This document shows, piece after piece, positions 16,673-56,487 of a DNA stretch of 64,000 bases. Source of the stretch: Anaeramoeba ignava BMAN (lineage: Eukaryota > Protista > Anaeramoebae); the NCBI GenBank assembly GCA_028826165.1, contig JAPDFW010000095.1, forward strand, positions 62,001 through 126,000. Direction: 5' to 3'. The notes beneath the pieces were generated by a model. It saw only the letters and a program-made list of their open reading frames with translations, made no database searches and had not been told where the DNA came from. The number at the start of each line of letters is the position of its first letter. Position 1 is the first letter of the stretch. The translations under genes were made by a program, and so were the position numbers.

Positions 16673-16735
16673 ATAAATTAAAAAATCATTTTTCATTTTT
16701 CATTTTCTTTTGTTTTAAATTTCAAAAAAAAAAAA

Positions 16736-17857: not shown

Positions 17858-17913
17858 AAACTAAAATTCCAAAAATTATTTTTTTCATTTTTTCATTTTT
17901 TTACTTTTCAAAA

Positions 17914-19747: not shown

Positions 19748-19971
19748 AATCAAAATCAAATTTAAATTAAAATTAAAATTAAAATTAAAATTAAAATTAA
19801 AATAAAAATCAAAATCAAAATTAAAAATTAAAATTAAAATTAAAATTAAAATTAAAATTAAAATTAAAATTAAAATTAAAATTAAAATTAAAATTAAAAT
19901 CAAAATTAAAATTAAAATTAAAATTAAAATTAAAATCAAAAATTATTTTTTCATTTTTTTTCTTTTTAAAA

Positions 19972-22031: not shown

Positions 22032-25000
22032 ATGTTCCAATTCTTAAACATAAAAAACATTTCTGAAATATCACCAACATCACCAAGAATACAATTCACA
22101 TCAGTAGCAATATCTAGCACAAGAATTGTAATAGGAACCAACACTGGAAGCGTATTTTATTATTCGAGAAAAAAACCACATCATTTAATAGGAATGTTTA
22201 CAGTTGAAAAAACTGGAGAAAAAATAAGATTACTAAACTTTAGCCCAGATGAACTAATGATTGCTTTCACTTCAGGAAAGCAAAATTTAAATGTTGTCAA
22301 GTTTATTTCTGAGGGAAAAAAGGAGCAGATTGTTCTGCATAATATCAACACAGAAAATGCTATTACATCCCTTGTTTGGAGCGATTCTTCACAGTATTTA
22401 TATTATGGGGATGAAAAAGGAGCTATTTATATTAGCAAAATTGCAGGCAAAAAAAGACTTGGGAATTTTAAAAAAAAAGCAAATAAAGATTTTGCCATTT
22501 TTCAAACAGACTCAAAAATTGTTCAAATGGATTTTTCTCAGGATAATCTGCTGGTTTCATCGCTTACAAAAGCAATACTAATACAAACACTTCCCATTCC
22601 AAAAAACAAAAACGACTTCCATTTAAACGAACCGATCCAAATTGGATCCAAACTTAGAGAAGGAGCATTTGGCGCTTGTTTTAGTGCAAATCCTAACGAG
22701 CTGCCTATTGTTATTGCAAGTCGACCCGGATATCGAGTCTGGGTCGCTGATAAAATCACAGGCAAAGTCTTGCAAACAATCAATTTCCGCAAGGCTTTTG
22801 AAAAAACCCAAGAATCAACTGTAGAATCAATTGAAAATCAAATAGAAATCGATCAAGATCTCCCCAACGATCTGTTTTTTAAATTCCAGGCTAAAAAATC
22901 TTCCCATTTTGGAAAGCTTTTTTTGATTGATAATTTTATCATTTCCTTTGGAAAGAAATCAGGAATCGCGATTCTTGATTTGACAAAGGCTTCCGTTCTT
23001 TTCCACTCTTCAAATACAACCATTTTGTCTTCAAGTTTCTTCAAAAATTCAGCCTTTATTTTATTCAGAAAGGACAAAACAACGCAACTCACACAATTTA
23101 AATTCCAATCAGCAAATAATTGGCTGAAGAAGCAAGAAAAACAAGTTTTTGATTTCAAATCATTTGATTTCGTTTCTCAAGAATTTTCCAACTCGCCAAA
23201 CTTCGAGGAAAAAGTGTTGCGTATTTTAAGCGTTATTGAGAAATACAAAATCAAGGAATTCACCTTGTTGATGAATTTCCACAAATTCTTGTCAAAGCAC
23301 GAGGATCTCAATGAATCCCTGTCTAAAAATCAGCAAATTATTCAATTTCAACATTTGGTTGAAAATTTGGAAAAGGAAAAGAAAAAAGAAGAAGAAGAAA
23401 GAATGAGAATTGAAAAGGAAAAGCAAGAAAAGAAAAGCAAGAACGCGAGGAAAGAGAGAGAAGAGAAAGAGAAGAGCGCCAAAAACAAGAAAAAGAAAGG
23501 CAGGAACGCGAGGAAAAGGAGAGACAAGAACGCGAAGAAAGGGAAAAGAAAGAAAGAGAGGAAAAAGAAAGAAAAGAAAAAGAAAAAAGAGAGAAAAAGG
23601 AGCAAAAACGAATTGAAAAGGAAAGAAAAAAGAAGGAAAAGAAGGAAAAGAAGGAAAGAGAAGCACTATTAAAAAAGGAAAAGGAAAAGGAAGAAAAATT
23701 GAAAAAAGAAGCACAAGCCAAAAAAACAACTCTCATTTCAATAGATTCTCCAACTCAATCACAACAACAACAAAGCACACTCTCAAAATCTAAATCAAAA
23801 TCAGAGTCAGAATCAGAACCAGAAACCCAACTTAAATCTCAATCCAAATTAGATTCAAAAATACAATCTCAATCACAACTCAAAACTCAGGAATTCATCC
23901 CTAATGATTTTTTACGCGAATTGGAAAATTCAATTCAACCCCAATTTATTGTTCAATCTGATGAACAGAAATCCAAATCAGATCTTGAAAAGTCGCAAAA
24001 TGAAAATTTACAACAAGATCAAACAGTTAACAATGAGGAAATTTCTGTTAAAAAAAACTCAATCAACGAAAAAGAATCCAATCAACTTTTGGAAAAGGAA
24101 AGTGAATCAATTCTTGCGAATCAATCTGACAAAAATACAAACACAACAACAATACAATTTGCAGAAAATCATCGTAAAACCAAGTCTCAAGAAGATATCC
24201 AAAAAATTCGGCCGCAAACTTCTTCAACTCCAAATATCAACGATTTATCCAAGAAATTAAAAGAACAAGAAGAAGAAAAAGAACGAGAAATGAAACGAAA
24301 AAAGCAAGAAATGATCACGCAATTCCAGCAACAAATGAACAAATATTCCAAGCAAATTTCAGATCTTTCACAAAGAATCATTCAAGGATGGAGAAATCAA
24401 TCAAATCAATTTGATTTCCGAGTTCCCGATCATGTTAATTTATCAAGCCAGTCAGATATCATGATCTGGATGGAAAAACTCGAAAGATTCCGCAAGTTTC
24501 TTTCCTCTCCACAAGTTCCGTTACCCCAAGAAATTAGCCTCACTGAGGCTCATGAACCCACAGATGACGATATCATCATATGCACTTTTCATTTCCAGAA
24601 ATATCTTTATTCGCTTGAAAACAATGAATCTTTGAAAACAAAAGGAAGACATCGACTCAAATATTATTGATTGGATCGCAAAATATTTGGATTTTGTTGA
24701 TTTTGATAAAGTGTTCCAAATTTGCAACTCAAAATTATTCTCCAAATCAATTGATTTTTTGATTAAACAGAAATTTGAGTCAACAAACACATCGATAACA
24801 ATAAACAACATGTTGAAACAGCAGAGCAAATCAATAGCTCCTGTTTTGAAAATCATTGATGATTCTGGGACTGCATATTATCTCTATCATTTCTTAGTCA
24901 CTTTGCTGAATTTAAATTGGAAAGAAACCGCCAAAAGATGCGCTTTATTTTATCCAATTATTCTGCCATTTAATATCAAAAAAACGTTGTTGAAAAATAG

Positions 25001-26171
25001 CGGCAATATAAAAAACGAGCATTATTATGAGGTGCTTATTTTTTATTATAATGCTCTTTTTTGTAATGACAAAAAAATCCATCTCAGAAAAAATCAAGTC
25101 TTGGTTCATTCTTTGATCAAATGCTTATTACTTCACAAACTTCCTGCAAAAGAGAAGATATTTGATTCAACAAACTCTTATCCTCAAAAGGATTCTCTGC
25201 TGATTAAATGGGTTCATGATCAAGAAATTGAGGATTTGGTTTTTAGTAATAAATATCATTTCAATTTCAACGGAAAATTGCATCATTTATTACTTCATTT
25301 TTCATTATCAAAAATCAGACAAATGTTCCAGAAATTTGGATATTTCAAAGGTTTAATTCGTCTGTATCTTTTTGAACACAATTATATTGAAGCTGAGAAA
25401 ATCTCACTTTTTTCAAATGATTTGGAAACTTTATCAAAAATTATTGGAAAGCATTATTTGCATAACAATTTCCAAGATATCCATAAATTACTTAATGATT
25501 TCCCGTTATTTTCAAGTAAAAATCCCGAATCACAAAATTTATCAAATTCTGTTGTTTTAGAGCTTATGAAACATGTTAGTTCTTTTATTATTTTGGATAT
25601 TCTCCAAGAATCACCTGATTTTACAAATAATCTTCAACCTATAATTTTCCAAAAAATTCTTTCACAAGCAAAATTATTATTTGAACAAAGAAAAGTTTTA
25701 TACAACTTGATTCAAATCTCTTCAGAACATATTTGGACAATCCAAACAAATACAATTTGCTCACAAATTTCACGAGTTAAAGATTTAGAATTAATGTTAT
25801 CAAAATCGAAAATTGACTATCAAAATCAAATTGAAAAAATGAAAACAGATTCAAATATAAATTCAAATGAAAATCAAAATCAAAATCAAAATCAAAATCA
25901 AAATCAAAAACAAGGAAAACAATTGATAGAATTACAACAAATGGTTGATGGTCATCAATTTCCTGTTAAAGAAAGTTTTTTAAGTTCAAGAGATCATTGG
26001 GGAAGAATTGTTAATGTTGGTTCAAGTGTTTTATGTCCTGTTTGTCAACTTCCTATTCTTCCAAAAAGTGGAACTGATATTATTGTTTTCAAATGTGGTC
26101 ATGTTTATCATAAAGGTTGTGTTCATGATTCTTGTGTTATTTGCTTTACTCAAAATTATTCTTTTTTTTAA
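22032..26171 (+). CDS. HPS5/TECPR2-like WD40 protein with charged linker, helical region and C-terminal RING-type zinc finger (frameshifted near 23400-23670 and ~24640)
   Basis: IGSKLREGAFGACF and ASRPGYRVWVAD resemble the HPS5/TECPR2 propeller motifs. C-terminal CPVC...FKCGHVYHKGC...CVIC. Three consecutive ORFs join across homopolymer indels. Confidence 0.7.
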
Positions 26172-26358: not shown

Positions 26359-28232
26359 TTAATCCCAATTTTTTAATATCTCTTTTGTTAATTTTTTGAT
26401 ATCTTTATCTTTATCATTTTGTTTTTGAATTTCATTCACTTTGTTTTTTAAATCTAATTTTCCTGCTTCTAAAATTTATTTTAAAAAAATTATTTTAAAA
26501 AAATTTAATTTAAAAATTTAATTTATAAAAAAATTTCAAACCTTCTTTTGAAACTTTGAAAATCTCAAACAACTTCAAAATTGCAACTTGGGTTGTATTC
26601 TGTTCTTCTGGTGATAAAGTTTTAGCACAAAAATCAATTAATTCTGTTCTTTTTTTTTGATCTAAATCTAAAAAGAATTTCAATCAAAACAAATATTTTT
26701 TTTATTATTATTAAATTTTAATTTAAACTTTAATTTAAATTTTTTTTTACTTGGATCTTTTGTAAAAATCTTAACTAAAGCTTCTAAACCAGGATCATAA
26801 ATTTCATTATTCTTTTCTGATTCTTTAATTGCTGTTAATATTCTGTCAATTCCCTTTTCTCCAATTTCCTTAATTTTATCTTTAAATTAAAATTTTGAAA
26901 ATTTTATTTTTAAATAGATTGAAAAATTTTTTTTGTTTTAAAAACCTTCTTGATTTGAATAAAAATTTAATAAGAAACATCCATTTTTTTGAATTGATAT
27001 AGTTTTTGGAAAAGATTCCATTGAATCTAAAATCTTGGAAATTGAAATATCTCTTTCTTCTTTTTCTAATAAAATTATTATTATAAATTTTTAAATTTTT
27101 AAATTTTCAAATTTTTAAATTTTCAAATCTACTTTCATCTTTGTTTTCCTTATTTAATCTAACTCCCTTCAAAAGCTTTTTTACTTCATTTTCTTCTCCT
27201 TTTTGAGGATCTTGATTATTTTCCAAATTTTCTTTTGGTTTTTCCATCGTTTTTTTATCATCTTTAATATTTTTAATTTCATTTTGGATCTTCTCAAGTT
27301 CAGTTTTCAATTTTTCTTCTTGTTGTTCAAGACCTGAAAGTTTCGTTGTCATCTCAGTAATCTTTTTTTCATTTTCCTTAATTTTTGTGTTTTTTTCATT
27401 CTCAAAAAATTCCATAACAACATTCATTGGAAAATAAGAAAGTCTTTTCAGTTCTTTAATTTGACTGTCTGAAATTGTTTTCAAATTCTTTAACTTGGTC
27501 CAAAATATCGAGGATTAATTTTCCATATGAAATTCGAATTTCTGGATTCATTGTTTGCTGTTGTTTTTTGTATTGCATTTCTTGACTTTTTTCATTTTTA
27601 CTCAACCATATTGTAATCATTTTAATCAAAGATTTTTCATATGTTTTTTCAGTGCTATATCCAAGTAATTCAATCAAAGAAATCAACTCTTCTTGAGTTA
27701 ATGTTGGGACTTTTTTTCCGAAATTTTCCCTGTCTTCATAAATTAATTTGGCACAAACTGGATCGAAGTCTCTTAAACTGATTGTTTTTAATTTCAAATA
27801 ATAATTGAATGCATTATCTTTATTTAAATTTTCTTGAATTTTCAATTCGATTTTTTCTTTAACAGTTTCCAATCCAAGTTGATCAGCAAAATCATACATT
27901 TTTTCGAAATTATTCATGTCAATATCAATGTGAAAATTGTAAAGGAATTGAATAATTGGTTCAACAATTTCTGGTTCAAAATCTCCAAATGAAATTTCAT
28001 TTACTCCTCTTTCTCTGATTTTGACGTATAATTTTGGAGCACGAGCATCAATGAAAATTTGATGGCATCGAATTGGTTTTTTTGATTTTCCACAATATAT
28101 TGTAAAATCTGCTCGTGATCTTTGTGTCAAATATATTGATCCAATTTGTTCTTTTGCTTCTTTTTCAATTTTTTTTTGAATTTTGGATTGTGAATTTGAT
28201 TGTACTTTTTTTCCTGCTAATGAAGGATCCAT
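26359..28232 (-). CDS. BTB/POZ-domain protein with coiled coil and spliced C-terminal helical region (4 GT-AG coding introns; frameshift near 27470)
   Basis: ADFTIYCG...IRCHQIFIDARAPKL...IIQFLY BTB motif. Canonical introns can be traced down to TAA at 26359-26361. Confidence 0.7.
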
Positions 28233-31192: not shown

Positions 31193-33358
31193 ATGTTTGG
31201 ATTAATAGAAGAAAATAATCAATTTGATAGTTATTCTGATTCATCAACATCTTCTAACGAAACTTCACAAGAAACTTCTAAAGAATCTCTTGAAGAAGAT
31301 TTAAATAAAAATAAAAATAAAAATAAAAATAAAAATAAAAATAATTTAAATAAAAATAATCAAAAAATAAGTGAAATTAATTATAAAAATGGTTACATTG
31401 ACAATTATATTGATTCAAAAAGTCCAAAACAAACAAAAAACAAATTAATTAACAAAAATGAACATATAAATCAAAATCAAAATCAAAATCAAAATCAAAA
31501 TCAAAATCAAAATCAAAATCAAAATCAAAATCAAAATCAAAATCAAAATCAAAATCAAAATCAAAATCAAAATATAAATCAAAATCAAAAACAAAATCAA
31601 AATCAAAATCAAAATCAAAATCAAAATCAAAATATAAAATAAAATCAAAATATAAATCAAAATCAAAATCAAAATCAAAATCAAAATCAAAATATAAATC
31701 AAAATCAAAATATAAATCAAAATATAAATCAAAATCAAAAGAAAAGATTAACCAAGAAAAAATCAATAAGACCTCTTCCTAAACCAATTCCTAATATAAA
31801 TTCCCAAATTAAAGCTGAAAAAATTGATCAAAATAATCAAAATTCAAACCAAAATCCAAAATCTTCCAAAATCAATATAAACTCAAAACAAAAACAAATA
31901 TCAAAATCACCACAAATTACCAAAGAATCAAAACCACCAAATATTCAAAGACAAAATTCTGAAATTGAAAATGAATCAACAAATAAGAAAAAAAGTAAAA
32001 AAAAACCAATAAGAAAAGAAGAAGAAAAAAAGAAAAAAAAAATATTGAAAAAATCATCATCAGAAAACGAGGAAACCAAAACAAATCAATTGCGGAATAA
32101 AACAAAAAAAGCAAACAAAAAGGAATCAGAAAGCAAAAAGAAAAAAAAGGAAACAGAAACAATAGAAAAGGAAGGAATTTACGCTGGAATATCAATTGAA
32201 AAAGCGCAATGGATTAAAAAGGAAAAAAAGGAGAGAATTGTATTTGATATCAAGTATCGAAATCAAGAGACAATGGAGGACAAGCTTATAGCAAGGGAAT
32301 ATCAAGATTTTGTTTGGTTAATGCATATTTTAAGGAGCGAAACACCGGAATTTATCATCCCAACAATTCCGGAAAAAATAAATCGCAAACAATTAAAGGA
32401 CGAGGCGCCAGATTCTTTAAGAGTATTTTTGGAACGCTTCCTCATTCGCGTTGCAACTCATCCTGTTCTCGCTTTTACTTCTAGTCTGCAAACATTTTTT
32501 GGAGTTTCCGATTCTTCTGCTCTGCAAAAGCAAAAAATCGGAAAAGGAAAGTTGCAAAAATCACAACAAGAACAAGCTTTTCTGGATTCCAAGATCAAAG
32601 AATACGAGGCAAAAAACCCTCAAATGGATGCTTCATTTATAAGCACAAAACAAAAGGAATTTATGAATATCAGTAAATCAACAGAAAAATTAATTAAAAT
32701 GTTAGAAGAATTGACGGGAATCAAAAACGGATTTAGCTCGATTTACCAACAAATCCCAGAATATTTGAACGAGCTTCTCCCGCCAATTGCTCCTGAAAGA
32801 AAACCCAATGTTTTTTGGGATCGTTTGACAGAAACCCTCAATTGGATTTCCTCTTTATTAAGTGAACGTTCTGAACAAGAACGTCAATTTATTGATGAAC
32901 AATTTAAAGATTTCAGAAGACAAACTGAAGGATGCTTTTTCGCTTTAAATTACTATGAAAAACAACTTTCCCAATATGTTAAACTTGCAAAGGATTTTGA
33001 GGCAAAAAGAATCAAGTATCAAAAACTTTTTGGTCAAGGTGTTAAAGAGGAAAAAGCTCAAGATGATTTATTGAAAACTGAAAAAACTTTGGAAATTGAA
33101 AGAGATAAATATCATCGTATTTGCAGAATTTTAACTGCTGAATTGAAAAGATTTGATGTTCAACATCGTCAAGATTTTCGTAATTTATTTCTTGATTATT
33201 CCATGTCTCAATTTGCTTTTCAAAGAGGAATTTTAATTCTTTGGAAGAAATTTGTTGAAACTTATCATCAATCATTTGAAAATGATGAAAATGATGAAAA
33301 TGAAAATGAAAATGAAATTGAAAATGAAAATTCAAATGAAAATTCAGATTCAGATTAA
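31193..33358 (+). CDS. Sorting nexin, PX-BAR type, with N-terminal NQ-rich low-complexity region (frameshifts near 31640 and 32030)
   Basis: PX motifs REYQDFVWL, IIPTIPEK, LERFLIRVATHPVL. BAR helix ELKRFDVQHRQDFRNLF...WKKF. Confidence 0.85.
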
Positions 33359-33751: not shown

Positions 33752-36700
33752 TTAAATTCTTCTTATTAATTTCTCAATTTCTTCTTGTGAACTTAATTCT
33801 GATGCAAGAAAAAGTAAATTTTGAAAATCTTTTTCTTGGAAAAAATTTTGAAACTTGGAAATAATTGAAATCATTCTTTCTTCAATTTCATCATCAATTA
33901 ATTGAGTTTCAATAACTTGAGCAATAATTGAAATAATTTTAGGAAGATTTTTGAAATTTTCACCAATAAAAACTTCATCTTCTTCCTCAATAAACTTGCA
34001 AAAAAGATCATATGTTTTTGGAGATTCTTCCTCATCAAATGAAACAGGAAGATAAGAAAGCCAAGCTTGTAAACTTTGTTGATATTGAATATTTTCTCTT
34101 TGAAAATAACAAATTTTTCCAAGTGCACAAATAGCATTATCAGTTGGTGAAGCATTTGATTCTTCACGTGAATCCTTCTGCAGAATAATTGAGTTTAATT
34201 TTTGTGTAATTTCTTGGCAATACGGCCCAAATATTTTGCCTAATTTCTCAGCACAAACGCCAAGACAATAAACAGTTGCTTGTCTTAAACCTTGATCTTG
34301 ACTCAACATAAACTTCATACTTGGTTCATAAAAAAAATCATTCCAATATTTCAAAAACTCATTTTCTCCTCCATATTCCACAATATCCACAAATACACAC
34401 ATTGCCATTTGCTTATCATAATCGCGTGTATTCGGCTCCAAAAACGAAAGATAATATTGCAAAATGTTATTATGGAAAAAATCCAGAAACACTTTTTTGT
34501 GGAATTTCCAAAATTGTGTCATTGTTTCGACAACTAAATATGAAATTTCATCTTCTGTTGATAATTTATCTGACATTTTCTTCTCCAAAGATTCGTGATA
34601 ATGATCTTCGTCCAAATAAATTGTTTGTAACTTCGATTTTCTTTTGATTGAAGACTCAATTACTAAAGGAATGATTGGAAGCAATTTCTCTGCAAATTCA
34701 TCACTTATTGTTGTTTTAACATATCCAAGAATTTCTCCAATACTTTGTATCAAAACTGAGATAACATCAGGAATTTTTTCCTTTTCAAGACATTTGCACA
34801 ATTCAATAAGAAATTGATGAACAAATTCCTCTCGAACTTGAGATAATTCCGAGTAAATGAGCTGATTGTTATTATCATTATTAATTTCAATTTTCAATTT
34901 TGAATCCAAATTTGAATTTTCTTTTTGTGAATTTTCTTTTTGTGAATTTTCTTCCTCATAATTTTCCATCATTACTTTCACTAACTCTGTCCCACACATT
35001 GATGCAAAAGTGCGTGTTGATTCATCATAATAGTAATTTAACAACGGCATAATTGAATCAACTATCATTCTTGAATAGGGAAGAATATTTGATTTGAGTT
35101 GCTCAATTAATTCGTTAATAACTGAAACTGCAACTTGTTTTTCTTCAATTTCTGCAGTTTTAATTTGTATTTTCTGATTCCGATATAAAAGAATTCCATG
35201 AACAGTATTTCCTTGAATTTCTAAATTTTGTTGAGTGGGATTAATTTCATCCTCAGATATAACATGTATTTGAGGTTGTTGAGTTGCTTTTTCCAAAATG
35301 AACGGGATGATTGAAGGTAAAAATGTCCCAAAATGATTGGGAATTGCTGATGCAAGTCTTGCCCATCCTCTTAAAAGATGCAATAGTTGTGGATCATCAT
35401 CTTCCAAATTACTTGATTGAATTTTAAGTAGTTCTTCAATAACTACATCTGAATCTTTAACGAAAATTTCTTCACCAACAGCTTCAGCAATAATTGTGAT
35501 GCATTCGATAAGTTTTGCTCTTAAATTTCTGTAATTTTTATCAGTAGCATTTGAGAATACTTGGGTTAAAAACGGGAATATTGAATCATAAAACTTTTTT
35601 TTATGGAATTTTAAAAATAATTTCTATAAATGAATTTTTGAATTTAAATTCCTTTTTCAAAAATTACTTGAGAAAATGATTCTTTTGAAACAGAAGCAAA
35701 TGAAGAAATTGCAGAAACAATTTGTTCTTGCAATTTAACAGACTCTTGTTGAATCATTTCAACAAACTTTGGCATAAACAATTCTAAATAAGGAGTAATA
35801 ATTTCTTGAGAAATTTCTTGACAAAAAAAAACTAAAGAAAGAAGTGTATGAAATCTAATAACTTCATAAGAATCACTCAATAAATTTAAAAGTTTTGGTA
35901 AATAATCTTCATAATAATTATTCTGAAATGTTTGCACAAAATCCGAACAAAGTCTTTGTGTTGCAATACATGCTGAAAGACGTACTCGAGGATGAGAATC
36001 CTCAAGAGAAAACGAAATCATATTTGCAATCTCATCCAAAAATTCAAGCATTATATCATGACAACCTTCCCCAATTGCTGATAATGCTATTGCAATTCCT
36101 GACCGTTTTTTCCAATCGTCAAGATTTTGTATTTTTTGAAACTGATTTTTTAATATTTCAAAGACTGGATCTCCAAAAGAAAGAGACATTCTTTCAAGAA
36201 CATTTTCTCCAACATTAAATTCTGTTATTATTGATGATTCAAGATCCTTGAGTTTTGAAACGTTATTTGGATTCAATGAGAGAATTACATGATTTTTTAA
36301 TGAGTATAATTGAAATTATCTTATTTTTTGATTTTTTATTTACAAAATTATTTTCCCAATCTTCATTTTCTTCATCAATATTAAAAATCATTTCAAGTGA
36401 TGTATTAAATAATGATTCAATAAAATTTTCTATTCTTTCTGCAATTCCTGTTGCATTTTCAGCAAAGGTAACAAGAAATTCTAATGAAAGAAATCTAATT
36501 TGTATTTTATTGAAAATAATTTTTAATTTTTAAATTAATTTTTAATTTTAATTTTTAATTTTAATTTTAATTTTAATTTTAAATTTAATATTAATTTTAA
36601 AATGAATTTTGATTTTAATTTTAAAATGAATTTTAATTTTAATTTTAAAATGAATTTTAATTTTAATTTTAAATTTAATTTTAATTTTAAATTTAATTTT

Positions 36701-37881
36701 AATAATTAATTTGAATTTTGATTTTAATTTTAATTTTAAAATGAATTTTAATTTTAATTTTAATTTTAAATTTAATTTTAAATTTAATTTTAATTTGAAT
36801 TTTAAAATGAATTTTGATTTTAATTGGAACAATAAATATCTTGAGGAAATTCATTAGAAACTGAAATTTTAAAGAAAATTTGACAAAAAGAATTATAATA
36901 TTGTCGATAAAATTGTGGAAGAATTGAAACAATATCAGTTAATTCTTGAATAATTTCTTCAATTAAATCCATCTTTTGTTGATTTGTTAATTCAAAAAAT
37001 AATTGTAATATTGAAGGAATAAAAACAGTAAATGATTCTCTTTTTTGTTTGTTTAAAATCAATATATATTTGTTAAAAGCTTTTGTTGCAAAAAATCGAA
37101 TTTGAAGAGAATTTTTTTCTGAAAAACTTTGTTTAAATATTTCAAAAATTTCATTTGGAATTGATTTAATCATTTCTGGTATTTGTAAAGAGAGTTGTTG
37201 AATTAAATATAATATATCAACTTGAAGTTGTTCATTTGAATCATTTACATTTTTAATAATAAATTGTATTAAATCATCCCATTTTTCTAAATAATTTTAA
37301 TTTTAATTTTAATTTGAATTTTATAAATAATTTTAATTTTATAAATAATTTTAATTTTAATTTTAATTTTGGTTTTAATTTTAATTTTGGTTTTAAAATG
37401 AATTTTTTTAATAGATACCAGAATCATAAGAAGTAGAAGCTAAAACAGAAATTGCATCACAAACTCTTTTTCTTAAAAAATTATTTGGTTGAATTTGAAA
37501 TGTAATTAAAAGTTGATTTTGAATTTGAATTTGATTTTCTCTATTAATATTTTTCCAATAAATTTGAGTTGGTGAAATTGCTTGTCTAAAAAGAATAGCT
37601 GATAATAATCTATTCTATTTTTAATAAAATTATAAAAAATTTTAAATTTAATTTTTTTAACGTTTTTTTTTCTTTTTTTTCTTTTTTTCTTTTTAATAAA
37701 GAATAAAAAATACTTGTTGAGAATTTGATTCTTGTAAAACTTTTAATAAAAATTCTAAACATTGAATTGAATTATTTTGTAAAAATTCTGTATAAATTTT
37801 TTCAGCTTCATTTCTTTTAAAATTATTTGTTTCTAAAAGTTGTGTTAATAATTCTTCAAATTCTTTAATTTGTTTTTCCAT
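33752..37881 (-). CDS. IPO5: Importin-5 / karyopherin beta-3 (Pse1/Kap121 family); 5 introns, one AT-AC
   Basis: Spliced motifs NFKRNEAE, IRFLSLEFLVTFAE, ALSAIGEGC, DSHPRVR, LRAKLIECITIIAEAVGEEIF, DDDPQ, IKTAEIEEK, LRQATVYCLGVCAE, PTDNAICALGKI, WLSYLPVSFDEEE. Confidence 0.9.
36502..36839 (-). other. AT-AC spliceosomal intron (ATATTT...AATAC), 338 nt, filled with AAAATT repeats
   Basis: CAA G|ATATTT...TAC|AA ATT AGA gives NEFPQ-E-IRFLSLEFL. The nearby GT combined with either nearby AG gives a frameshift or a TAA. Confidence 0.8.
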
Positions 37882-37989: not shown

Positions 37990-38240
37990 TTTCTTTTTTT
38001 TTTTCTTTCTTGTTAATTAATTTGTTCTCTTTCTCTTTTTTGTTAATTAATTTGTTTTCTTTTTCTTTTTCTTGTTAATTAATTTGTTCTCTTTCTCTTT
38101 TTTGTTAATTAATTTTCTTTTTCTTTTTTGTTGATTAATTTGTTTTCTTTCTCTTTTTTGTTGATTAATTTGTTCTCTTTTTCTTTTTTGTTAATTAATT
38201 TGTTTTCTTTTTCTTTCTTGTTGATTAATTTGTTTTCTTT
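37990..38240 (-). repeat. ~30-bp tandem repeat containing the last codons and stop of the upstream membrane-protein gene
   Basis: Unit AAAGA(A/G)AACAAATTAAT(C/T)AAC matches the gene's KKTN-stop sequence. Confidence 0.7.
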
Positions 38241-41200
38241 GATTGATTTAAAGATAAATTCTGTTTGAAAAATTTATTCGTAAGTCTTTTTGATTTTTTA
38301 ATATCTTTTGGAGTGAAATTTGTATTTGAATTCAAATATAAAAGTCCTTCAAATCTAATTTTTGTTAAAAGATTTGTAAATTGAATTTTTTCTTGTAAAG
38401 AAGCTTGAATAAACCAAGCTTTAATAATAAGATAAAAAGAATCTTTCCATTTGGGTAAAATTGTTTTCCAAAATTGATCAATTTTCAATTTTTGTTTTTC
38501 AGTTTCTTTTGAATTATAATAATCTTTGATTTGTTGAAAAAATTCTCTATGAGATTTGTTTTTATGATCCGAACTTTCAAGAATCCAATCCCAAATCAAA
38601 AAAAAGGAAGGTTTTGAAGCTAAAAATTTCAGAATAGTTTGTCCACTTGCAATTTCAATAGATTTTTGAACCTCATCAACATCTTTTCCTTTGTGAACTC
38701 TTACTCTGTGTCGAATTTCAAAAAGAATCATAATAATAAGAGTTGAAAATGAAACCCAAATTAACACTACAATAACTGTTGCTAAAATCCCTTTTGCACT
38801 TGTTTCTTCTAAATCATTTGAAACGAAAACCATTCCTGAAAAGAGAATAATTTCGGAAAAGCAAATCAACACAAATTCAAGTGTGTTGTGTCGATCTGAA
38901 ATGAAAGGCTTTGCATGAATTTGTAAAACAAGAGCAAAAAGAAGAACAATAACGCAAATGACTGGCTGAATAACTGAATCAAATGAAAGAAATAATTGAG
39001 CAATAGTCAAAAATAATTTGCGAATCATCACAAATATTTCCCAAAAAAACCATTCTTTTGTGTATCTTGCACATAGCAATCCAAATCTTAAATCAAATGT
39101 TTCTTCATCAAGTTTTTTAGAAGAAACAAAAAAAAGAATCATAAGAATAAAAGGGATTCCAAAAACATAAAGAACCAGAAAAAGTATTGCCCACGGAAGT
39201 ATATCTTTCCACCATTTATCATAACAGAAAAGTGCTGGATCTCCTCCAAATGTATATGTTCCTTCTGATTGCTTTTTGCAATCAAATATTTGGAGAACTT
39301 TGTAAGAAAGAAATAAATACACAAAGGACAGAATTGTTGTGTATGAATTGATCAAATTGTTATGGAGAGATTTCCTCTGTTCTTTGCCAAATCCATGTGT
39401 AAAAAATTGACTAATTTTGAATCTTAACCAGGGAAAGATATAAATGTATTTGTTTGTTGTTTTTCTACTTGGTTTTGAACAAAATCTTGGGAATTTTCTC
39501 ATGAATCCTGCTCCACATTTTTCAACAATTTTGGAATGAATGAAAACAAGAAAATAAACAAACAACAACACAAAGAAAAGAATGAAAGGGAAAACCATGC
39601 AAAGGATCCATTTTTGGGTATAAGTTAAAGGTAAACTGCATTCAACTGCAAGAAAATCAATATTGAAATTGAATATCGAAATTGATCTCCATGTTGATTC
39701 AATCGAACTTGGCCAATTTAATTTAAGTCCTGATATGACTGCAAGAACTTGAAGAAAAGAGAACATAATACTAAAAGACGCGAAATAATTTTTAATTTTT
39801 CTTGCAATAATGAAAAGAAACAAACAAAGGAAAACAATCAAAAAACCAACAAGAATCAATCGATTTTTTTGATTATTAGGGCATTTCATGCATTGCTCTC
39901 CGAATTTGTAAAATCCTTTCAAACAAGCTGCACATAAATTACCACTATATCCAAGTTCACTGTTACATTTATTAGTTCCTCCTCCTGGACATGCCTCTTT
40001 CACTGAGCATTCAAGAAATGTTGCTGGATCTGAATCTGAATGCCAAAATCCTTCTTCTGCAGAAGGGAAAAGAATTCCAACATCATTGCACACAGTTCCT
40101 TTCGGACAAAGTTTGCATACCTCACTTGCAATCCCATAATATCCTACTGAACAAAGACAATCATCAATATCTGATGCTCCATAAACATTTGTTTCTGAAT
40201 TTGCTGGGCATGATTTGCATATTTCTTTTCCCATTTCATCTTGATAAGTATCTCTTCCGCATGCAATACAGAATCTTTGTCCTAATAGATCGTTATATGT
40301 CCCACTAAAACAAGGATAGCAAGTTGCAGATCCTTCTTGTGGATTGAATGTTCCTTTTGGACAATATTCACATTTTGTTGGATTATCACTGAAGTTTCCA
40401 GTTCCACAAAGTTGGCAACCTGTAGAACGATTGTCAGTATTGTATTGGCCTGGTGAGCATTCTTCGCAATTAGCTGAGCCATTTTTGGATGAAAATGTTC
40501 CTGGCAAACATTCAAAACATTCTGTTTGTTCTTGAGCTGATTGATAATATCCTAAACCGCAAGGTGTGCATTCTGCTTGCGCTGTATCGTTTGCAACATA
40601 TCCTGGTTTGCAAGGAATACAAGAAAATGCACCGTATTCATTATTATATGTTCCATTAGCGCAATCAATACATTTTTGATCAAAACCTCTACTATATTGT
40701 CCTTTCGGACATCCTTTTACTTTTGCTTTTATCCAATTCCCATCTTGTGAAAATTCAATATATTGTTCATCTTGTGATTGAAGTTTTTCTACATTAAATG
40801 GATAGAATGCAATTAAATAAATTGCATTATATGGATAATATCTTGGACTTCCTTCTGATTCTGGAAGTAAATCAAACCATATTTGTCCATCTATTTCCAG
40901 TACTTGATCAATTGACAAATAACTCAAATCATTTTTCAATTTGAAAGTAATATTTGTATTCGAACTTAAATTAAAATCCCCTGATAATATAATTCCTTCT
41001 TGAATTATGAAACTTCCATTAAAAGTTACTGTTTTAAAATTTACAACATTAATCGTTGAATTAGTTAAATATGTTATTGCAGAAATATTATTTTTAACAT
41101 TAGTATTATCCAAAATGGATGCTGCTGCAACGTTTAAAGTGGAATTATTTAATTCAAAATGTTCATGACTGTATAAACTGTGCAATATGATTTGAGAGTC

Positions 41201-44200
41201 ATATGCTGAAAAATTTCCATAATTATAATAATTAGTGGAACCTAAAGAAAAAATTGATGATTCAATAAGAAAAACTCCTTGATTATCAAATTCTATAAAC
41301 GCAGTATCATGAATCAATGAAACTGAATTATCATATTCTAAAATGCCAAATATTGGAGGAATTTGGAAAACTGAATCAAAGAAAGAAATTTTAGTGCCAT
41401 TTTCAGTATTAAAACTATTTCCTTCCAAGGTTGAATTTGAAATGGTTATGAAATATTCAGAATCAAAAAAATTTATTTGTCCAGATACAATAATATGAAC
41501 AAAATCAATTTGAACTTCATCATAAATATTCAAATCTGCTGCAATATTAATTTGTTGCTGGAAACTTCCCATTCCTTTAATTTTTGCTGATTTACTTAAA
41601 TTTAATCCTTTTTGAAAAGTTACATTATTGTATACTTCAATAATTCCTGAAGAAGATACTTCTTGATCGAAAAAAGTAACAAGAGGAGAATTAACATTTA
41701 TATTCCCTCGATTATCAACAGAAAAATTAAAATAAACTTGAGTAGGTGATCCAACAAAAAATTTTTCTTCTTCTTCTTTGTTTTCATTGCTTAAGGTTGT
41801 ATAATTTGGATTTATTATCATATTTCCTTCATTCACAATTTCTGATAAATAATCGATGTTTGTGAGACTATATGTTTTGATTATCAAATTAGATGTATTT
41901 TTGATATCGAATTTAATATTATTGAAAATAGCACCTCCATTGATTTCAACAATTCCTGATGATGAAATTAATGATTGGTCAGTTCGGTTTTCGTTAACAA
42001 AAGATTCTGGTGTGCCATCTCCAAAAATTAATTTTGAATAACTGAAATTTGTTGTAATTTTTGTGAAATTGAGTTTTCCTTTGATCAAATTGAGATAATT
42101 AAGAAAAATATCAGTTTCTAAATGAGCTTCTGCACTGGAATCATGAATTTCTAATCTTCCAATACTACCATAATAATAATTATATATTCGTAAAATAGAT
42201 CCATAAAGTGAAATTCCCCCGCTCAAATCACTTATTACATCTCCATTAATTTCCAAATCAACATTTTGTAATTCAAGTGTTGATCCATATATAACAGAAA
42301 AATTTAAATTATCTTGTCCTTGATTATTAGTGAAATCCAAAAATGTATGATTTATTGAAAAAATTGTGAGATTTGAATTTGAATTTAGATCTAATCCTGA
42401 ATAAGATCCGAAAAAAATATTTGATGAATTTAGATTAAGGGTTGATTGGATATTTTCTTTTGCTTGAATTTTCCCATATTCTATTGTTATATACGAATTA
42501 CTGAAATAATTAGTGCCTTCAATTAAAACATTTTGTAAAATTGAATTAAACCCAGTTATGTTTGAACTTCTTATTTTGAGTGAAGGAAGATTGGGTTGGA
42601 TGTTAGAAAAAGTCAAATTTACTTGATTAAGAGTCAATGGATATTCATTTTCTGAATTACAATTTAAAATCATAAAAGGATCAGCAAGTTCTGAATTTTC
42701 AATCTTTAAAAATCCATTTAATATGATGTTTGTATTCTTAAAGATACTTGTGTTTAGATATGAAAGTACCAAATTTCCAGTTTCGTTGATTTGAATAATT
42801 TCTCCTTCTAATACTGAGCTAATACTCAAATTTCCTCCAACACTTAATTGTTGTATCGAAAATATTCCATTTCCATAAATTTGATAATTTGAACCATCTT
42901 CAAAGTTTGTAATTGGTGAATTTAAAGAAGAGTTTTGAAAATAAAGTGATCCTATTCCATTAAATGTTGTGAATGGTGATGAAATATTGATATAATTGAT
43001 TGATGAGAAGTTTGAATCAAATCTCGTTCTATTTTCAACAAATAAAAGAATACTATTATTTGCTGAAATTGAACCTCCATTGATTGAGATGATTGGAATT
43101 GTATAATTTGTGTTTGGTTGGTTAGAATATAATTCCAGATTGGCATTAAAATTTTCCAAACTAATATTAGGAAGATGAACTAAATTCAGATAAGTGTTGA
43201 TAGAAAAATTATTGTATAATTTAATGTAGTTATCAAATTCAGAATAAGTATCGGAATTTCCCAAACTCAAGATTTGTAAAGAAGAATTAATTATTTTGAC
43301 TCCTGTTTCATTGAAAAAAAGATTATTTGTAATTTGGAGAGTTCCTAAACCATTTAATGAAGTTACTCCAATAAAGTCAAGTCTTTTGATTGTAAGATTT
43401 TGATTGATTTCTAAATTTGAATTGTTAAGTATCAAAGATAATCCGCTTGTTTCAAAAGAACAATTTGAAGAAAGAATAAAACAATCTTTTTGGATTTTAA
43501 TTTGAGTTTCATCCGTTGTAAAATTTGTACCAGTAAAAATAAGAGAAGAATCAATAATTTGAGAATTTAAAGGATATCCATGAAAATCGAGGGAAGTGTT
43601 CACATTTAAAACATCACCTGTAATTGAAGAATTTCCCCAAATCGATAAAGTAGAAGTAGTTAAATTTGATATTTCAATTGAAGAATTTTTCAAAGTCAAA
43701 TATCGAAGTTCTACCTCAGTAGTGTTAAATGTTAAATTTATGTTTTCGATCCAAAATTCTGCTGGGTTACAGTTAATTAAATTAATTGGAATCCGATTAA
43801 TTGAGAAAAAAAAATTTCCTTCACATCCATTCATTGTTAGAGATGCTCCTGATTTATCTAGTGCATCAAAAAAAAATTTTTGCATATAAACGGGATTTTC
43901 ATCAATCAAAGACTCAACCAAAAAATTTGAATTAGTGGAAAAGATAAAAGAACCTTGATCAGAAAGTTCAGTTATATTACAATTCAATAATTCAACATAT
44001 GAATCTGTCACTAGCATGTGAGATGTTAAACCAAAAGAGATACTATCAAAAATGAAACTACTTCCTACTCGAATTATCATTTGAGGTCTGAAAGTAAAAT
44101 TAGTTCCACAATTTGATCCATTGAAAACAATATTTGTACAATTTTCAAACTATTTCAAAACAAAACAAAACAAATTTAAATTTAATATAAAAAAGGAATG

Positions 44201-44718: not shown

Positions 44719-46509
44719 TTATTTTTTTCTTTTTTGGTTATTAAATTTCTTAATTAATAAATCAAATAAATTTGGATTTGTTTGATTTAATTGAAAATAA
44801 TCAATTCCAATTTGAATTTCATTAATCATTTCTTTTGTAATTTGAATTCCATCTTTAATTTGATTTGAATAAATCCAATATTCTAATATTTGAAATGATT
44901 TATTACTTAATTCACTATAATCTGTAACTTTATTTGAAGTATCATTTGTTACAGATAAAAACATTCCTCGATATAATTCACTTCTCATTATTAATATTAA
45001 TTTAGGAAATTTATATTGTTTTTCTTTTCTTTCAATTATAAAATCTTTTTCATTTTCATTTTCATTTTCATTTAAATAAATTTTTTTCATTGTTTCTTCA
45101 ATTTTTTCATTTGAATTTATAATTTCTTTAATTTCATAATATAATTTTGGATTTGTATCTTTATTTGAATAAATCATTTCAAATATTTGATTTGATTCTT
45201 TAATTGATTTATTTTGAAATAATTTCTTGAAGTTTTTCAATTTGATTTTTTCATCTTTTAATCTATATTTCAATATTAATTTATGAGCTTCAATTATTTC
45301 TCCATTTTCGGTTTTAAATGAAATATTGCAAAATTCTTTTCTTCTAAATAATTTTATCAAATCTTCTTCAAGATTGGAAAAATAAGGAGGAGAATAATAA
45401 AGAAATGAATTCCGAAATCCACAAGAAATATGATAATTGGAAATATCTTCATTAAATCTTAATTTAGGAAGTTCAATTTGAATTGGTTTTGTTTGATATT
45501 TTATATCTCCAGTTCCTAATTGACCAAAATCATTATCTCCAAATCCAATCATCTTTTTCTTGGAAGTTAAAATCAAAGTATGAGAATAACCAACAGAAAA
45601 ATCAATAATATTATCATTTTCAAATAAAGATTTTTTGATTTCAGTAAATTCATAAGTATCTTCATTTTTGCCAAGTCCATTAAATTTATGATCTCCACAT
45701 GAATAAAGTTTTCTTTTTTGTTTGTTTTTCCTTTTTTGATTTTCATTTTCAATCAACATTATTGAAAAAGATTCTCCAGATTGAATATCAATTATTTTGC
45801 CTTTTGGAATATTTTGGATTTTGGTTAATTTTTTGATTTGCCAATCTTTTCTTGATTCTCCTAATCCAAGTTGACCGTATTGATTATAACCGCATCCAAA
45901 TAATTCTTGATTTGAATTTAAAAGAAAAACATGATTTGAAGTATTTCCTGAAAATATTTTAGAAACATTTTTCATCATTAAAATTGGTTTTTCTGCTATT
46001 TCAAGTGTTTCAGAATCAAAACCAAGTTGACCAGATTGATTAAAGCCAATTCCATAAACATTATGATTTGAAGTTAATAAGTAAATTGAATAAGCACCAC
46101 AAACAATATCTTCAATTATTCTATCATTTTTATCTTCAATTAATGATGAAATATTGATAAATTCTTTTTTATTATTTGGATTTATATCTTCTCCTTTTGC
46201 AAATACATTTCCTTCTATTGTTAAAATAGCTTCATTTTCAATATCAACAGTTACTTTTTGAATATTTTCAATTTGGATTTTTTGAGGATTTTGTTTTGAA
46301 TCATTCCCTTTTAAATATTTAATTACTTCTCCATTTTCGAAAAGGAACACTGCTGAAAATCCTGATGATGAAATTTGTTTAATTTGTTTTTCATTTTCAT
46401 TTTCATTTTCAAATTTAATTTGAATTGGTTTTGTTATTTTTCTTGATTCGGTTTTTAAAAGAATTGGTAATTGATTTAAACCAAAAAATAAACTTTCATT
46501 CATTTTCAA
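44719..46509 (-). CDS. RCC1-BTB protein, copy D
   Basis: Colinear paralogue, 596-aa ORF. Confidence 0.85.
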   Translation of the reverse strand: MKMNESLFFGLNQLPILLKTESRKITKPIQIKFENENENEKQIKQISSSGFSAVFLFENGEVIKYLKGNDSKQNPQKIQIENIQKVTVDIENEAILTIEGNVFAKGEDINPNNKKEFINISSLIEDKNDRIIEDIVCGAYSIYLLTSNHNVYGIGFNQSGQLGFDSETLEIAEKPILMMKNVSKIFSGNTSNHVFLLNSNQELFGCGYNQYGQLGLGESRKDWQIKKLTKIQNIPKGKIIDIQSGESFSIMLIENENQKRKNKQKRKLYSCGDHKFNGLGKNEDTYEFTEIKKSLFENDNIIDFSVGYSHTLILTSKKKMIGFGDNDFGQLGTGDIKYQTKPIQIELPKLRFNEDISNYHISCGFRNSFLYYSPPYFSNLEEDLIKLFRRKEFCNISFKTENGEIIEAHKLILKYRLKDEKIKLKNFKKLFQNKSIKESNQIFEMIYSNKDTNPKLYYEIKEIINSNEKIEETMKKIYLNENENENEKDFIIERKEKQYKFPKLILIMRSELYRGMFLSVTNDTSNKVTDYSELSNKSFQILEYWIYSNQIKDGIQITKEMINEIQIGIDYFQLNQTNPNLFDLLIKKFNNQKRKK

Positions 46510-46606
46510 AAAGAAAAAAAAATGAAAAAAATGAAAATGAAAAGAAAAAATAATGAAAAAATGAAAAAACGTGTTTTTAATTTTATTTTTAATTTTAATT
46601 TTAATT

Positions 46607-48382
46607 TTAATTTTTTCTTTTTTGATTTTTAAATTTGTTAATTAATAAATCAAATAAATTTGGATTTGTTTGATTTAATTGAAAATAATCAATTCCTCTT
46701 TCTAATTCTTCAATTATTTCTTGTGTAATTTGAATTCCATCTTTAATTTGATTTGAATAAATCCAATATTCAAATATTTGAAATGATTTATTACTTAATT
46801 CACTATAATCTGTAACTTTATTTGATTTATCTTCTGTTACAGATAAAAACATTCCTCGATATAATTCACTTCTCATTATTAATATTAATTTAGGAAATTT
46901 ATATTGTTTTTCTTTTCTTTCAATTATAAAATCTTTTTCATTTTCATTTAAATAAATTCTTTTCATTGTTTCTTCAATTTTTTCATTTGAATTTATAATT
47001 TCTTTAATTTCAAAATATAATTTTGGATTTATTATTCTGTTTGAATAAATCATTTCAAATATTTGATTTGATTCTTTAATTGATTTTTTTGAAATAATTT
47101 CTTGAAGTTTTTCAATTTCATTTTGATTTTGATTTAATCTATATTTCAATATTAATTTATGAGCTTTAATTATTTCTCCATTTTCTGTTTTAAATGAAAT
47201 ATCACAAAATTCTTTTCTTCTAAATAATTTTATCAAATCTTCTTCAAGATTAGAAAAAGAAGAAAGAAAAGGAGAATAATAAAGAAATGAATTATAAAAA
47301 TCACCACAAAGAACATGATAATTGGGAATTTCTTCATTAAATCTTAATTCAGGAAGTTCAATTTGAATTGGAATTAATTTATCTTTTGTATCTCCAGTTC
47401 CTAATTGACCATAAGCATTATATCCAAATGTAATCAATTTTCCTTTGGAAGTTAAAATCAAATTATGTTTATATCCAACAGAAATTTCAAGAATATCATC
47501 ATTTTCAAATAAAGATGATTTGATTTCACTAAATTCATAAGTATCGTTATTTTGGCCAAGTCCATTCCAATGAAGATCTCCACATGAATAAAGTTTTCTT
47601 TTTGGATTTTGATTTTCATTTTCAATCAACATTATTGAATGATAATTTGCAATTTGAATATCAATTATTTTGCCTTTTGGAATATTTTGGATTTTGGTTA
47701 ATTCTTCAATCTTTTTTTCAATTTTTAATTCTCCTAATCCAAGTCTACCTTTTAGATTACCACCACATCCAAATAATTCTTGATTTGAATTTAAAAGAAA
47801 AACTGAAGTTGAACAATTTCCTGAAAATATTTTAGAAACATTTTTCATCATTAAAATTGGTTTTTCTGTTTTTTCAAGTGTTATATAATTAGAACCAAGT
47901 TGACCATAATAATTTGAACCAATTCCATAAACATTATGATTTGAAGTTAATAAGTAAATTGAATTAGCTCCAGAAACAATATCTTGAATTATTCTATCAT
48001 TTGTATCTTCAATTAATGATGAAATATTGATAAATTCATTTAGATTTTTTGGATTTATATCTTTTCCTTTTGCAAATACATTTCCTTCTATTGTTAAAAT
48101 AGCTTCATTTCGAACACCAACAGTTACTTTTTGAATATTTTCTTCAATTTGGATTTTTGAAGGATTTTGATTTGAATCATTTTCATTTAAATATTCTATT
48201 GCTTTTCCATTTTCAAAAAGGAAAATTGTTGCAAAATGACCTGATGAAATTTGTTTAATTTGTTTTTCATTTTCATTTTCATTTTCAAATTTAAATTGAA
48301 TTGGTTTTATTATTATTTCATTTGGTTTATTTTTTATAAGTTTTGGATTTTTATTTCAAACCAAAAATAAAATTTCATTCAT
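46607..48382 (-). CDS. RCC1-BTB protein, copy E (frameshift near the 5' end)
   Basis: ATGAATGAAATT at 48382, colinear with other copies. Long stretches identical to copy F. Confidence 0.78.
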
Positions 48383-48448
48383 TTTTGAAAAGAAAAAAAT
48401 GAAAAATTAATTTTAATTTTAATTTTAATTTTAATTTTAATTTTAATT

Positions 48449-50263: not shown

Positions 50264-50329
50264 TTTTGGAAAAGAAAAAAATGAATTTTCATTTTTTCAT
50301 TTTTTCATTTTTTTATTTTCTAAAATAAA

Positions 50330-51975: not shown

Positions 51976-52065
51976 AATTTAGTTTATTTGTGTTTTCATG
52001 ACTTAAATGTTATGAAAGATCAAATTTTTGGAATTTCAATTTCAATTTTAATTTCAATTTTAATT

Positions 52066-53858: not shown

Positions 53859-53904
53859 TTTTGAAAAGAAAAAAAATGAAAAAATGAAAAAAATAATTTT
53901 TGGA

Positions 53905-54225
53905 ATTTTGATTTTAATTTTAATTTTGATTTTAATTTTAATTTTAATTTTAATTTTAATTTTAATTTTAATTTTAATTTTAATTTTAATTTTAATTTTA
54001 ATTTTAATTTTAATTTTAATTTTGATTTTAATTTTAATTTTAATTTTAATTTTAATTTTAATTTTGATTTTAATTTTTAATTTTGATTTTTAATTTTGAT
54101 TTTAATTTTAATTTTAATTTTAATTTTAATTTTAATTTTAATTTTAATTTTAATTTTAATTTTGATTTTGATTTTAATTTTAATTTTAATTTTAATTTTA
54201 ATTTTAATTTTAATTTTAATTTTAA
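53905..54225 (-). repeat. (AAAATT)n microsatellite downstream of copy H
   Basis: Direct reading. Confidence 0.9.
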
Positions 54226-56232: not shown

Positions 56233-56487
56233 TTTTCTTTATTTATAATTTATAATTTATAATTTATAATTTATAATTTGAAAATAATTTTTTATTTTTT
56301 TTTTTGAAAAGAAAAAAAATGAAAAATTAAAAGAGAAAAAATAAAAAAAAAAATAAATAAAAAGGAGAAAAAAAAAGATTTAATTCAGTTCTCAATTTAA
56401 ATTATTTTTTTTTATTTCATTTTTCTATTTTATTCTTTTTATTTAAATTTCCAAAAACAAAAACAAAAAAAAGCAAAAAATTTTAAA

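What the first reader, a model, noticed from the sequence alone, without database searches (positions are those of the whole stretch)
36502..36839. Second, independent AT-AC intron (importin-5): AT-AC may be a common intron class in this genome
Seen: on the minus strand CAA G|ATATTT...AAAATAC|AA ATT AGA yields NEFPQEIRFLSLEFLVTFAE, matching the importin-5 R.LALE.L.T.AE helix. The only nearby GT gives a frameshift with the first AG and a TAA with the second. ATATTT and ATAC mirror the GTATTT and ATAG sites used by canonical introns of the same gene. Two AT-AC introns among roughly 32 introns traced by hand is far more than expected for U2-type AT-AC introns, which are very rare in studied eukaryotes. 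Paired changes at both ends in two genes argue against sequencing error. Inference: a spliceosome with relaxed terminal-nucleotide recognition that accepts G-G or A-C end pairing, likely missed by gene predictors.
Basis: partly seen in the sequence, partly recalled or inferred. Interest (0 to 1): 0.85.

Follow-up and report, generated by a model that had tools for sequence, protein, structure and literature searches.

The report
Worn-down minor-type AT-AC intron in importin
One importin gene of the anaerobic protist Anaeramoeba ignava really has an intron that starts with AT and ends with AC, but it is a worn-down copy of an ordinary minor-spliceosome intron found at the same spot in all five sister genes, so it shows an intron changing class, not a new kind of splicing machinery.

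Summary
On the minus strand, 36839-36502 is a 338-nt intron of an importin-5/Kap121-like gene. No GT-AG or GC-AG junction keeps the protein. The AT-AC junction restores exactly the one residue that 40 orthologues require.

The genome is Anaeramoeba ignava (a published protein maps at 100% identity). It has six importin-beta-3 paralogues. In all five others the intron at this position and phase is AT-AC with a perfect U12 donor, ATATCCTT. One of those junctions is backed by an identical transcriptome ORF. The genome also has U6atac and U11 candidates.

So this intron is not an independent invention by a relaxed spliceosome. It descends from a minor-type intron and has lost its U12 donor (now ATATTTAT) and branch box.

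It now scores like this genome's U2-type donors with A in place of G. I think it is most likely removed by the major spliceosome, which would make it a minor-to-major conversion that kept AT-AC ends. That step is inferred, because no read evidence could be obtained.

Other readers of this scan had already noted canonical U12 AT-AC introns elsewhere in this genome. The window's other AT-AC intron lies in the single-copy CysRS gene and has a U2-like donor.

The parts
33752..37881 (-). Importin-5/Kap121-like (importin beta-3) gene with six exons. It is the contig C96 paralogue of a six-member family in Anaeramoeba ignava.
   Evidence: ORFs and manual splice mapping. PDB importin-5 hit at E 7e-32. 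Best library relatives are A. ignava karyopherin beta-3 proteins at 33-35% identity. Paralogue map.
36840..37286 (-). Exon 3. In-frame part 37284-36841 = 148 aa, ending NEFPQ, plus the first base G of a split codon.
   Evidence: Matches Kap121 residues 126-256. Last residue falls at alignment column 422.
36502..36839 (-). AT-AC intron, 338 nt, phase 1.
   Evidence: It is the only junction that restores the one missing residue and keeps the conserved Arg. It is the positional homologue of U12-type AT-AC introns in five paralogues.
36832..36839 (-). Donor ATATTTAT. The paralogues have ATATCCTT, so this copy differs at +5, +6 and +7.
   Evidence: Read. PWM log2 odds U12/U2 = -6.0, against +6.5 to +8.2 for six U12 donors of this genome.
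36502..36515 (-). 3' end of the intron: a weak branch-like TTTCAAT whose branch A lies 8 nt before the terminal AC.
   Evidence: Strict match to TCCTTRAY is 5 of 8. That is within the range of this genome's U2-type introns (4-7) and at or below that of its U12 introns (5-8, five of six at 6 or more).
36529..36825 (-). Tandem repeat filling the intron body (24-nt unit, about 12 copies). It contains almost no G.
   Evidence: Tandem Repeats Finder. Similar A/T repeats fill other introns of this gene family.
36344..36501 (-). Exon 4. Two bases AA complete the split codon GAA, followed by 52 aa starting IRFLSLEFLVTF.
   Evidence: Aligns to importin-5 residues 275-322. First residue falls at alignment column 424.

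Best explanation
This is a real AT-AC intron of a functional importin beta-3 paralogue of Anaeramoeba ignava. It descends from a canonical minor-type (U12-type) AT-AC intron that predates the duplication of the six paralogues. In this copy alone the U12 donor box has decayed from ATATCCTT to ATATTTAT, and the U12 branch box is no longer recognisable. The AT and AC ends have stayed.

What remains reads like this genome's ordinary U2-type donor (GTA followed by A/T) with A in place of G. I therefore think it is now most likely removed by the major spliceosome. The known non-Watson-Crick pairing of the first and last intron bases tolerates A with C in place of G with G. That would make this a minor-to-major conversion that kept its AT-AC termini, probably driven by the extreme A+T pressure on introns in this genome.

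Shown: the junction, by homology; descent from a U12-type intron; loss of the U12 signals. Inferred: which spliceosome acts today, and the role of A+T pressure.
For: Junction: exactly one residue is missing between exons 3 and 4 in a 40-orthologue alignment, and no viable GT-AG or GC-AG solution exists.

Genome identity: P0002 (NCBI KAJ5074794, A. ignava) maps at 100% identity to contig C69 of this assembly.

Descent: mapping the annotated proteins back onto their genes gives AT-AC with donor ATATCCTT at the homologous phase-1 position in C69, C64 and C115. Every other intron of those genes is GT-AG. The same donor and position are seen in C24 and C35, whose 3' context AAATAC|AAATTAGA equals ours.

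cDNA support: the C69 protein is identical to an independent Trinity transcriptome ORF from EukProt.

Minor spliceosome: a U6atac candidate carries the AAGGAGAGA...GGUUAGCA box (29.9 bits). A U11 candidate has a 5' AAAGGA complementary to UCCUUU. A further canonical U12 AT-AC intron lies in SRP68.

Loss of signals: donor log2 odds are -6.0 against +6.5 to +8.2, and the branch-box match is no better than in U2-type introns.

Major-spliceosome capacity: the single-copy CysRS gene in the same window has an AT-AC intron with donor ATAAGT. That donor cannot pair with U11 or U6atac but matches the U2 consensus after +1.

A+T pressure: introns are 91.9% A+T in this species (PMC11550330).
Against: No product of this gene is present in the protein collections I could search, although three paralogues are. 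Expression is therefore unproven.

The two C-to-T changes at +5 and +6 would still allow G.U wobble pairs with U11 and U6atac. TTTCAAT sits at a U12-like distance from the 3' end. Residual minor-spliceosome use therefore cannot be excluded.

U12 and U4atac snRNAs were not found. The U2 and U12 weight matrices rest on only 17 and 6 sites.
Confidence: 0.55

Rival explanations
1. The intron is still a minor-spliceosome (U12-dependent) intron with an unusually degenerate donor. It would be recognised through A1-U2-A3, G.U wobble pairs at +5 and +6, and a weak branch site 8 nt from the AC.
For: It is the positional homologue of five canonical U12 introns. The AT-AC ends are retained. C-to-T changes keep wobble pairing with the GG of the U11 and U6atac candidates. 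One confirmed U12 paralogue intron (C69) also has an all-T branch box, TTTTTAAT. Branch-like TTTCAAT lies at a U12-like distance.
Against: Three of the most conserved U12 donor positions (+5, +6, +7) are changed, while all six verified U12 donors of this genome are perfect. The A at +7 is a mismatch. The branch-box match is no better than in U2-type introns. The U11 and U6atac candidates keep GG, so there is no sign of co-evolution towards T-rich donors.
Confidence: 0.27
2. This is an independent U2-type AT-AC intron that arose from a GT-AG intron by paired end changes and is tolerated by a spliceosome with relaxed terminal-nucleotide recognition. AT-AC would then be a common class that gene predictors miss.
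For: The donor mirrors the gene's GTATTT donors. A second AT-AC intron with a U2-like donor lies in CysRS in the same 64 kb. Another reader noted a hybrid ATAAGCTT donor elsewhere (unchecked).
Against: All five paralogues have AT-AC with a U12 donor at this exact site, so the ends were inherited and not newly paired. A minor spliceosome is present. U2-type AT-AC splicing is known from ordinary spliceosomes, for example the major AT-AC introns cited in PMC8280824. First-stage notes list only about eight AT-AC introns in 289 windows.
Confidence: 0.06
3. The intron is not spliced as modelled. The paralogue would be a recently disabled or silent gene whose U12 donor has decayed. Alternatively, the two end bases are assembly errors.
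For: No product of this gene appears in the protein or transcriptome-derived collections searched. The assembly is Nanopore-based (PMC11550330). Frame changes without introns occur elsewhere in the window.
Against: The six exons give about 1128 codons with no stop or frameshift, in a genome where random frames close after about 10 codons. Family motifs are kept. The AT and AC ends match the paralogues and so are not errors. The assembly was polished with Illumina reads (PMC11550330). Proteins encoded by the window may simply be withheld from the collections (notice).
Confidence: 0.1

Closest known systems
U12-type (minor-spliceosome) AT-AC introns, for example human IPO5 intron 21 (PMC8280824) and the five A. 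ignava importin paralogue introns found here
   Same: AT-AC termini, no polypyrimidine tract, and a minor spliceosome in the genome. It shares position and phase with canonical U12 introns in the paralogues.
   Different: The donor is ATATTTAT, not ATATCCTT, and there is no convincing TCCTTRAY branch box. The human IPO5 minor intron is intron 21, far downstream of this position (about residue 270), so it is not the same intron.
U2-type AT-AC introns of the major spliceosome. They are rare in studied eukaryotes; examples named in PMC8280824 are SYCP2 intron 5 and TAF2 intron 1.
   Same: AT-AC ends combined with a donor that follows the species' U2 consensus after +1, and no U12 box.
   Different: Here the ancestry can be traced to a U12-type intron through a paralogue series. 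Dependence on the major spliceosome is inferred, not shown.
Minor-to-major intron conversion, as surveyed in PMC10639083 (Larue and Roy 2023)
   Same: An ancestral minor intron loses its high-information motifs and comes to look like a major intron at the same position.
   Different: This one has kept AT-AC. It is seen among paralogues within one genome rather than between species.

Membership tests
U12-type (minor) intron | Donor box RTATCCTT at +1 to +8 | tested here: not met
   The donor is ATATTTAT. Log2 odds U12/U2 = -6.0, against +6.5 to +8.2 for six U12 donors of this genome.
U12-type (minor) intron | Branch box TCCTTRAY about 10-20 nt before the 3' end | tested here: inconclusive
   The best match is TTTTCAAT: 5 of 8 strict, 7 of 8 allowing C-to-T, 8 nt from the end. 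This is within the range of U2-type introns of the same genes.
U12-type (minor) intron | Minor spliceosome present in the genome | tested here: met
   U6atac candidate at 29.9 bits with the diagnostic box, and a U11 candidate at 26 bits; both score below Rfam cut-offs. Canonical ATATCCTT...AC introns occur in six genes, one confirmed by cDNA. U12 snRNA was not found.
U12-type (minor) intron | Homology to known U12-type introns (same position and phase) | tested here: met
   Five of five paralogues have a U12-type AT-AC intron at this site.
U12-type (minor) intron | Splicing depends on U11/U12/U4atac/U6atac | not testable with these tools
   This needs RNA-seq combined with perturbation of the minor spliceosome.
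U2-type AT-AC intron | AT and AC termini at the true junction | tested here: met
   Shown by homology and paralogue phase only. No cDNA was available for this copy.
U2-type AT-AC intron | Donor follows the species' U2 consensus after +1 and lacks the U12 box | tested here: met
   ATATTT compares with GTATTT and GTAAAT in the same gene. The score lies inside the U2 range.
U2-type AT-AC intron | Removed by the major spliceosome | not testable with these tools
   Inferred only. Indirect support comes from the CysRS AT-AC intron with donor ATAAGT in a single-copy gene.

The most novel reading that the evidence does not exclude
Extreme A+T pressure in Anaeramoeba ignava (introns about 92% A+T) erodes the CC of U12 donors. 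AT-AC minor introns would then convert in place into AT-AC major introns. That would make U2-type AT-AC introns far more frequent here than in any studied eukaryote (two in one 64-kb window) and would leave a living series of minor-to-major conversion intermediates.
Probability: 0.3. Interest if true: 0.7.

Novelty: new member of a known kind. Interest (0 to 1): 0.5.

Why it matters
The finding replaces a claim of unusual splicing machinery with a documented history. The six paralogues form a natural series: five keep a textbook minor-type AT-AC intron, and one has lost the minor-type signals but kept the AT-AC ends.

That makes this locus a clean test case for how minor introns become major introns, and for whether U2-type AT-AC introns are leftovers of that process.

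Canonical U12 donors, one cDNA-confirmed junction and U6atac/U11 candidates together indicate a working minor spliceosome in Anaeramoeba, which the genus's literature treats as a metamonad. As far as I know none has been described for that group, and I found no paper on it.

In practice, gene predictors that allow only GT-AG, or AT-AC with a U12 box, will break this gene and CysRS.

Tried and rejected

2. I first read the genome count of ATATCCTT (2682, against 455 for the reversed word) as a massive expansion of minor introns. I rejected this: 17-18 of 20 sampled sites lie inside long ORFs on one strand or the other, so the excess is coding bias.

3. U12 snRNA was not found with RF00007, a 24-mer allowing 3 mismatches, or a gapped pattern.

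4. A search with exon 6 alone found nothing in its length range. Two further searches aimed at this gene's own product (a region of P0001, and an alignment holding the exons as separate rows) returned only paralogues.

5. The look-up of encoding contigs has no record for the three paralogue proteins.

6. An ORF-bridging census of AT-AC against decoy end pairs in the window was uninformative. Thousands of chance solutions appear for every A/T-rich pair.

7. The ATG9 and NELF-B loci I fetched did not show the AT-AC introns reported by other readers. Those introns probably lie outside the fetched stretches.

8. The human IPO5 minor intron is intron 21, not this position.

Full report
**What is there.**
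The window is extremely A+T-rich. On the minus strand, 37881-33752 holds a six-exon gene. Exon 5 matches solved importin-5 at E 7e-32 and yeast Kap121 at 2e-20. Exon 4 matches importin-5 residues 275-322, and exon 3 matches Kap121 residues 126-256. Four of its introns are ordinary GT-AG introns with donors such as GTATTT and GTAAAT. Its body is a 24-nt tandem repeat with almost no G.

**Is the junction real?**
- I added the exon translations as separate fragments to a MAFFT alignment of 40 full-length relatives taken from the representative search.
- Exon 3 ends at column 422 and exon 4 begins at column 424, so one residue is missing. That residue is the split codon G|AA.
- The conserved Arg of the R.LALEFL helix is encoded immediately after the AC and upstream of any AG.
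- I enumerated all junctions over the whole of exons 3 and 4. This gave eight in-frame GT-AG solutions and no GC-AG solution. Every one removes about 100 residues or the conserved helix.
- It is not confirmed by cDNA. No RNA run was listed.
Exons were searched one by one by reference.

**Whose genome, and what do the sister genes show?**
- The best relatives were three karyopherin beta-3 proteins of Anaeramoeba ignava.
- One of them, P0002, maps to contig C69 of this same assembly at 100% identity. The contig lengths recorded for all three proteins equal contigs of this assembly.
- The genome is therefore A. ignava. It carries six importin beta-3 paralogues, on contigs C69, C64, C115, C24, C35 and C96 (this window). 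They are only 22-32% identical to the window gene over the large last exon.
- I mapped the three annotated proteins exactly onto their genes. All their introns are GT-AG except one each.
- That exception lies at the position homologous to our intron and in the same phase 1. It is AT-AC with donor ATATCCTT.
- The unannotated C24 and C35 copies have the same donor at the same place.
- C35 even shares the 3' context AAATAC followed by AAATTAGA.
- The P0002 sequence is also identical to an independent Trinity transcriptome ORF, so AT-AC splicing at this site has cDNA support in a paralogue.

**Is there a minor spliceosome?**
- A U6atac candidate (C71:58882-58994, 29.9 bits) carries the diagnostic AAGGAGAGA and GGUUAGCA boxes.
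- A U11 candidate (C1:50977-51083, 26 bits) begins with AAAGGA, which is complementary to UCCUUU of the donor. Both score below Rfam's cut-offs.
- I confirmed one further canonical U12 AT-AC intron in SRP68 (L009:1355-1462). It had been noted by another reader of this scan.
- U12 itself was not found.

**What has happened to this copy?**
- By parsimony the ancestral intron was a U12-type AT-AC intron.
- In the C96 copy, positions +5 to +7 changed from CCT to TTA.
- I built weight matrices from 17 U2-type and 6 U12-type donors of this genome. A few of the U2 coordinates were off by one to three bases, which blurs that matrix slightly.
- The donor scores -6.0 log2 units, well inside the U2 range. 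The six U12 donors score +6.5 to +8.2.
- Its best branch-box match is 5 of 8. The U12 introns score 5-8, five of the six at 6 or more. The U2-type introns score 4-7.
- Both U12 signals are therefore gone, while the AT and AC ends remain.

**Which spliceosome acts now?**
This is inference.
- For the major spliceosome:
  - The donor pairs with a canonical U1 5' end (assumed, since U1 was not located here) about as well as its GT neighbours, apart from +1.
  - A-C terminal pairs are known to substitute for G-G. This is established knowledge of AT-AC U2-type introns; natural examples are cited in PMC8280824.
  - The single-copy CysRS gene in this window has an AT-AC intron whose donor ATAAGT has no complementarity to U11 or U6atac.
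- For the minor spliceosome: the two C-to-T changes keep G.U wobble pairs, and a branch-like TTTCAAT lies at a U12-like distance from the 3' end.
- My estimates are:

| Reading | Probability |
|---|---|
| Major spliceosome (converted) | about 0.55 |
| Still minor spliceosome | about 0.27 |
| Not spliced, or an artefact | about 0.1 |

**Is AT-AC a common class?**
- I first took a six-fold genome excess of ATATCCTT over its reversed word as a sign of expansion. Sampling showed that most sites lie inside ORFs, so I withdrew that reading.
- First-stage notes list about eight AT-AC introns in 289 windows (unchecked).
- Two AT-AC introns without a U12 box in one window is still notable. It fits the idea that A+T pressure (introns 91.9% A+T, PMC11550330) erodes U12 donors. 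A census needs the RNA-seq data.

**Comparison with known systems.**
- The intron is best filed as a new member of known kinds. It is an AT-AC intron of U12 ancestry that now looks U2-type, which fits minor-to-major conversion (PMC10639083).
- Human IPO5 also has a minor AT-AC intron, but it is intron 21 and not this site.

Noticed in passing
window 11855-12478 (+): This is the window's other AT-AC intron. It lies in the cysteinyl-tRNA synthetase gene and joins DIDDK to IILRSREN in phase 0, with donor ATAAGT and 3' end ...AACAC. The donor is U2-like (log2 odds -6.1) and the gene is single-copy in the genome.
   Followed up: partly
window 55396-55436 (-), 27459-27514 (-), 24636-24667 (+): The reading frame changes inside continuous coding sequence with no A/T-rich insert. 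One case lies at a T-run in an RCC1-BTB family gene. These may be residual homopolymer indel errors of the Nanopore-based assembly, or pseudogenes.
   Followed up: no
L039:317-380 (G000 contig C115, importin paralogue P0001, first intron): A 64-nt GT-AG intron with donor GTAGCCTT and TACTTAAT 9 nt before the AG. It scores +6.1 on the U12/U2 donor matrix. It may be a GT-AG minor-type or hybrid intron.
   Followed up: no
G000:C71:58882-58994 (+) and G000:C1:50977-51083 (+): Candidate U6atac and U11 snRNA genes. Both score below Rfam's gathering scores, but both have the diagnostic pairing boxes. Together with the canonical U12 donors, they point to a working minor spliceosome in Anaeramoeba, which the genus's literature treats as a metamonad.
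   Followed up: partly
whole genome G000: The 8-mer ATATCCTT is about six times more frequent than its reversed word (2682 against 455). Most sampled sites are inside ORFs, so word counts against a reversed control mislead in this genome.
   Followed up: yes
window 14362-21990 (+) and 44722-56238 (-): Arrays of closely related RCC1-repeat plus BTB genes. The window also holds GCN1 (2179-10365), actin (16736-17854), an HPS5/Vps8-like gene (22032-26168), a PX/Vps5 sorting nexin (32045-33355) and a 1951-aa cysteine-rich membrane protein (38225-44080).
   Followed up: partly
window 33752-37881 (-): No product of this importin paralogue appears in the protein collections searched, although three paralogues of the same genome are annotated there. 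Either the window's own proteins are withheld, or the gene model was missed or broken at the AT-AC intron.
   Followed up: partly
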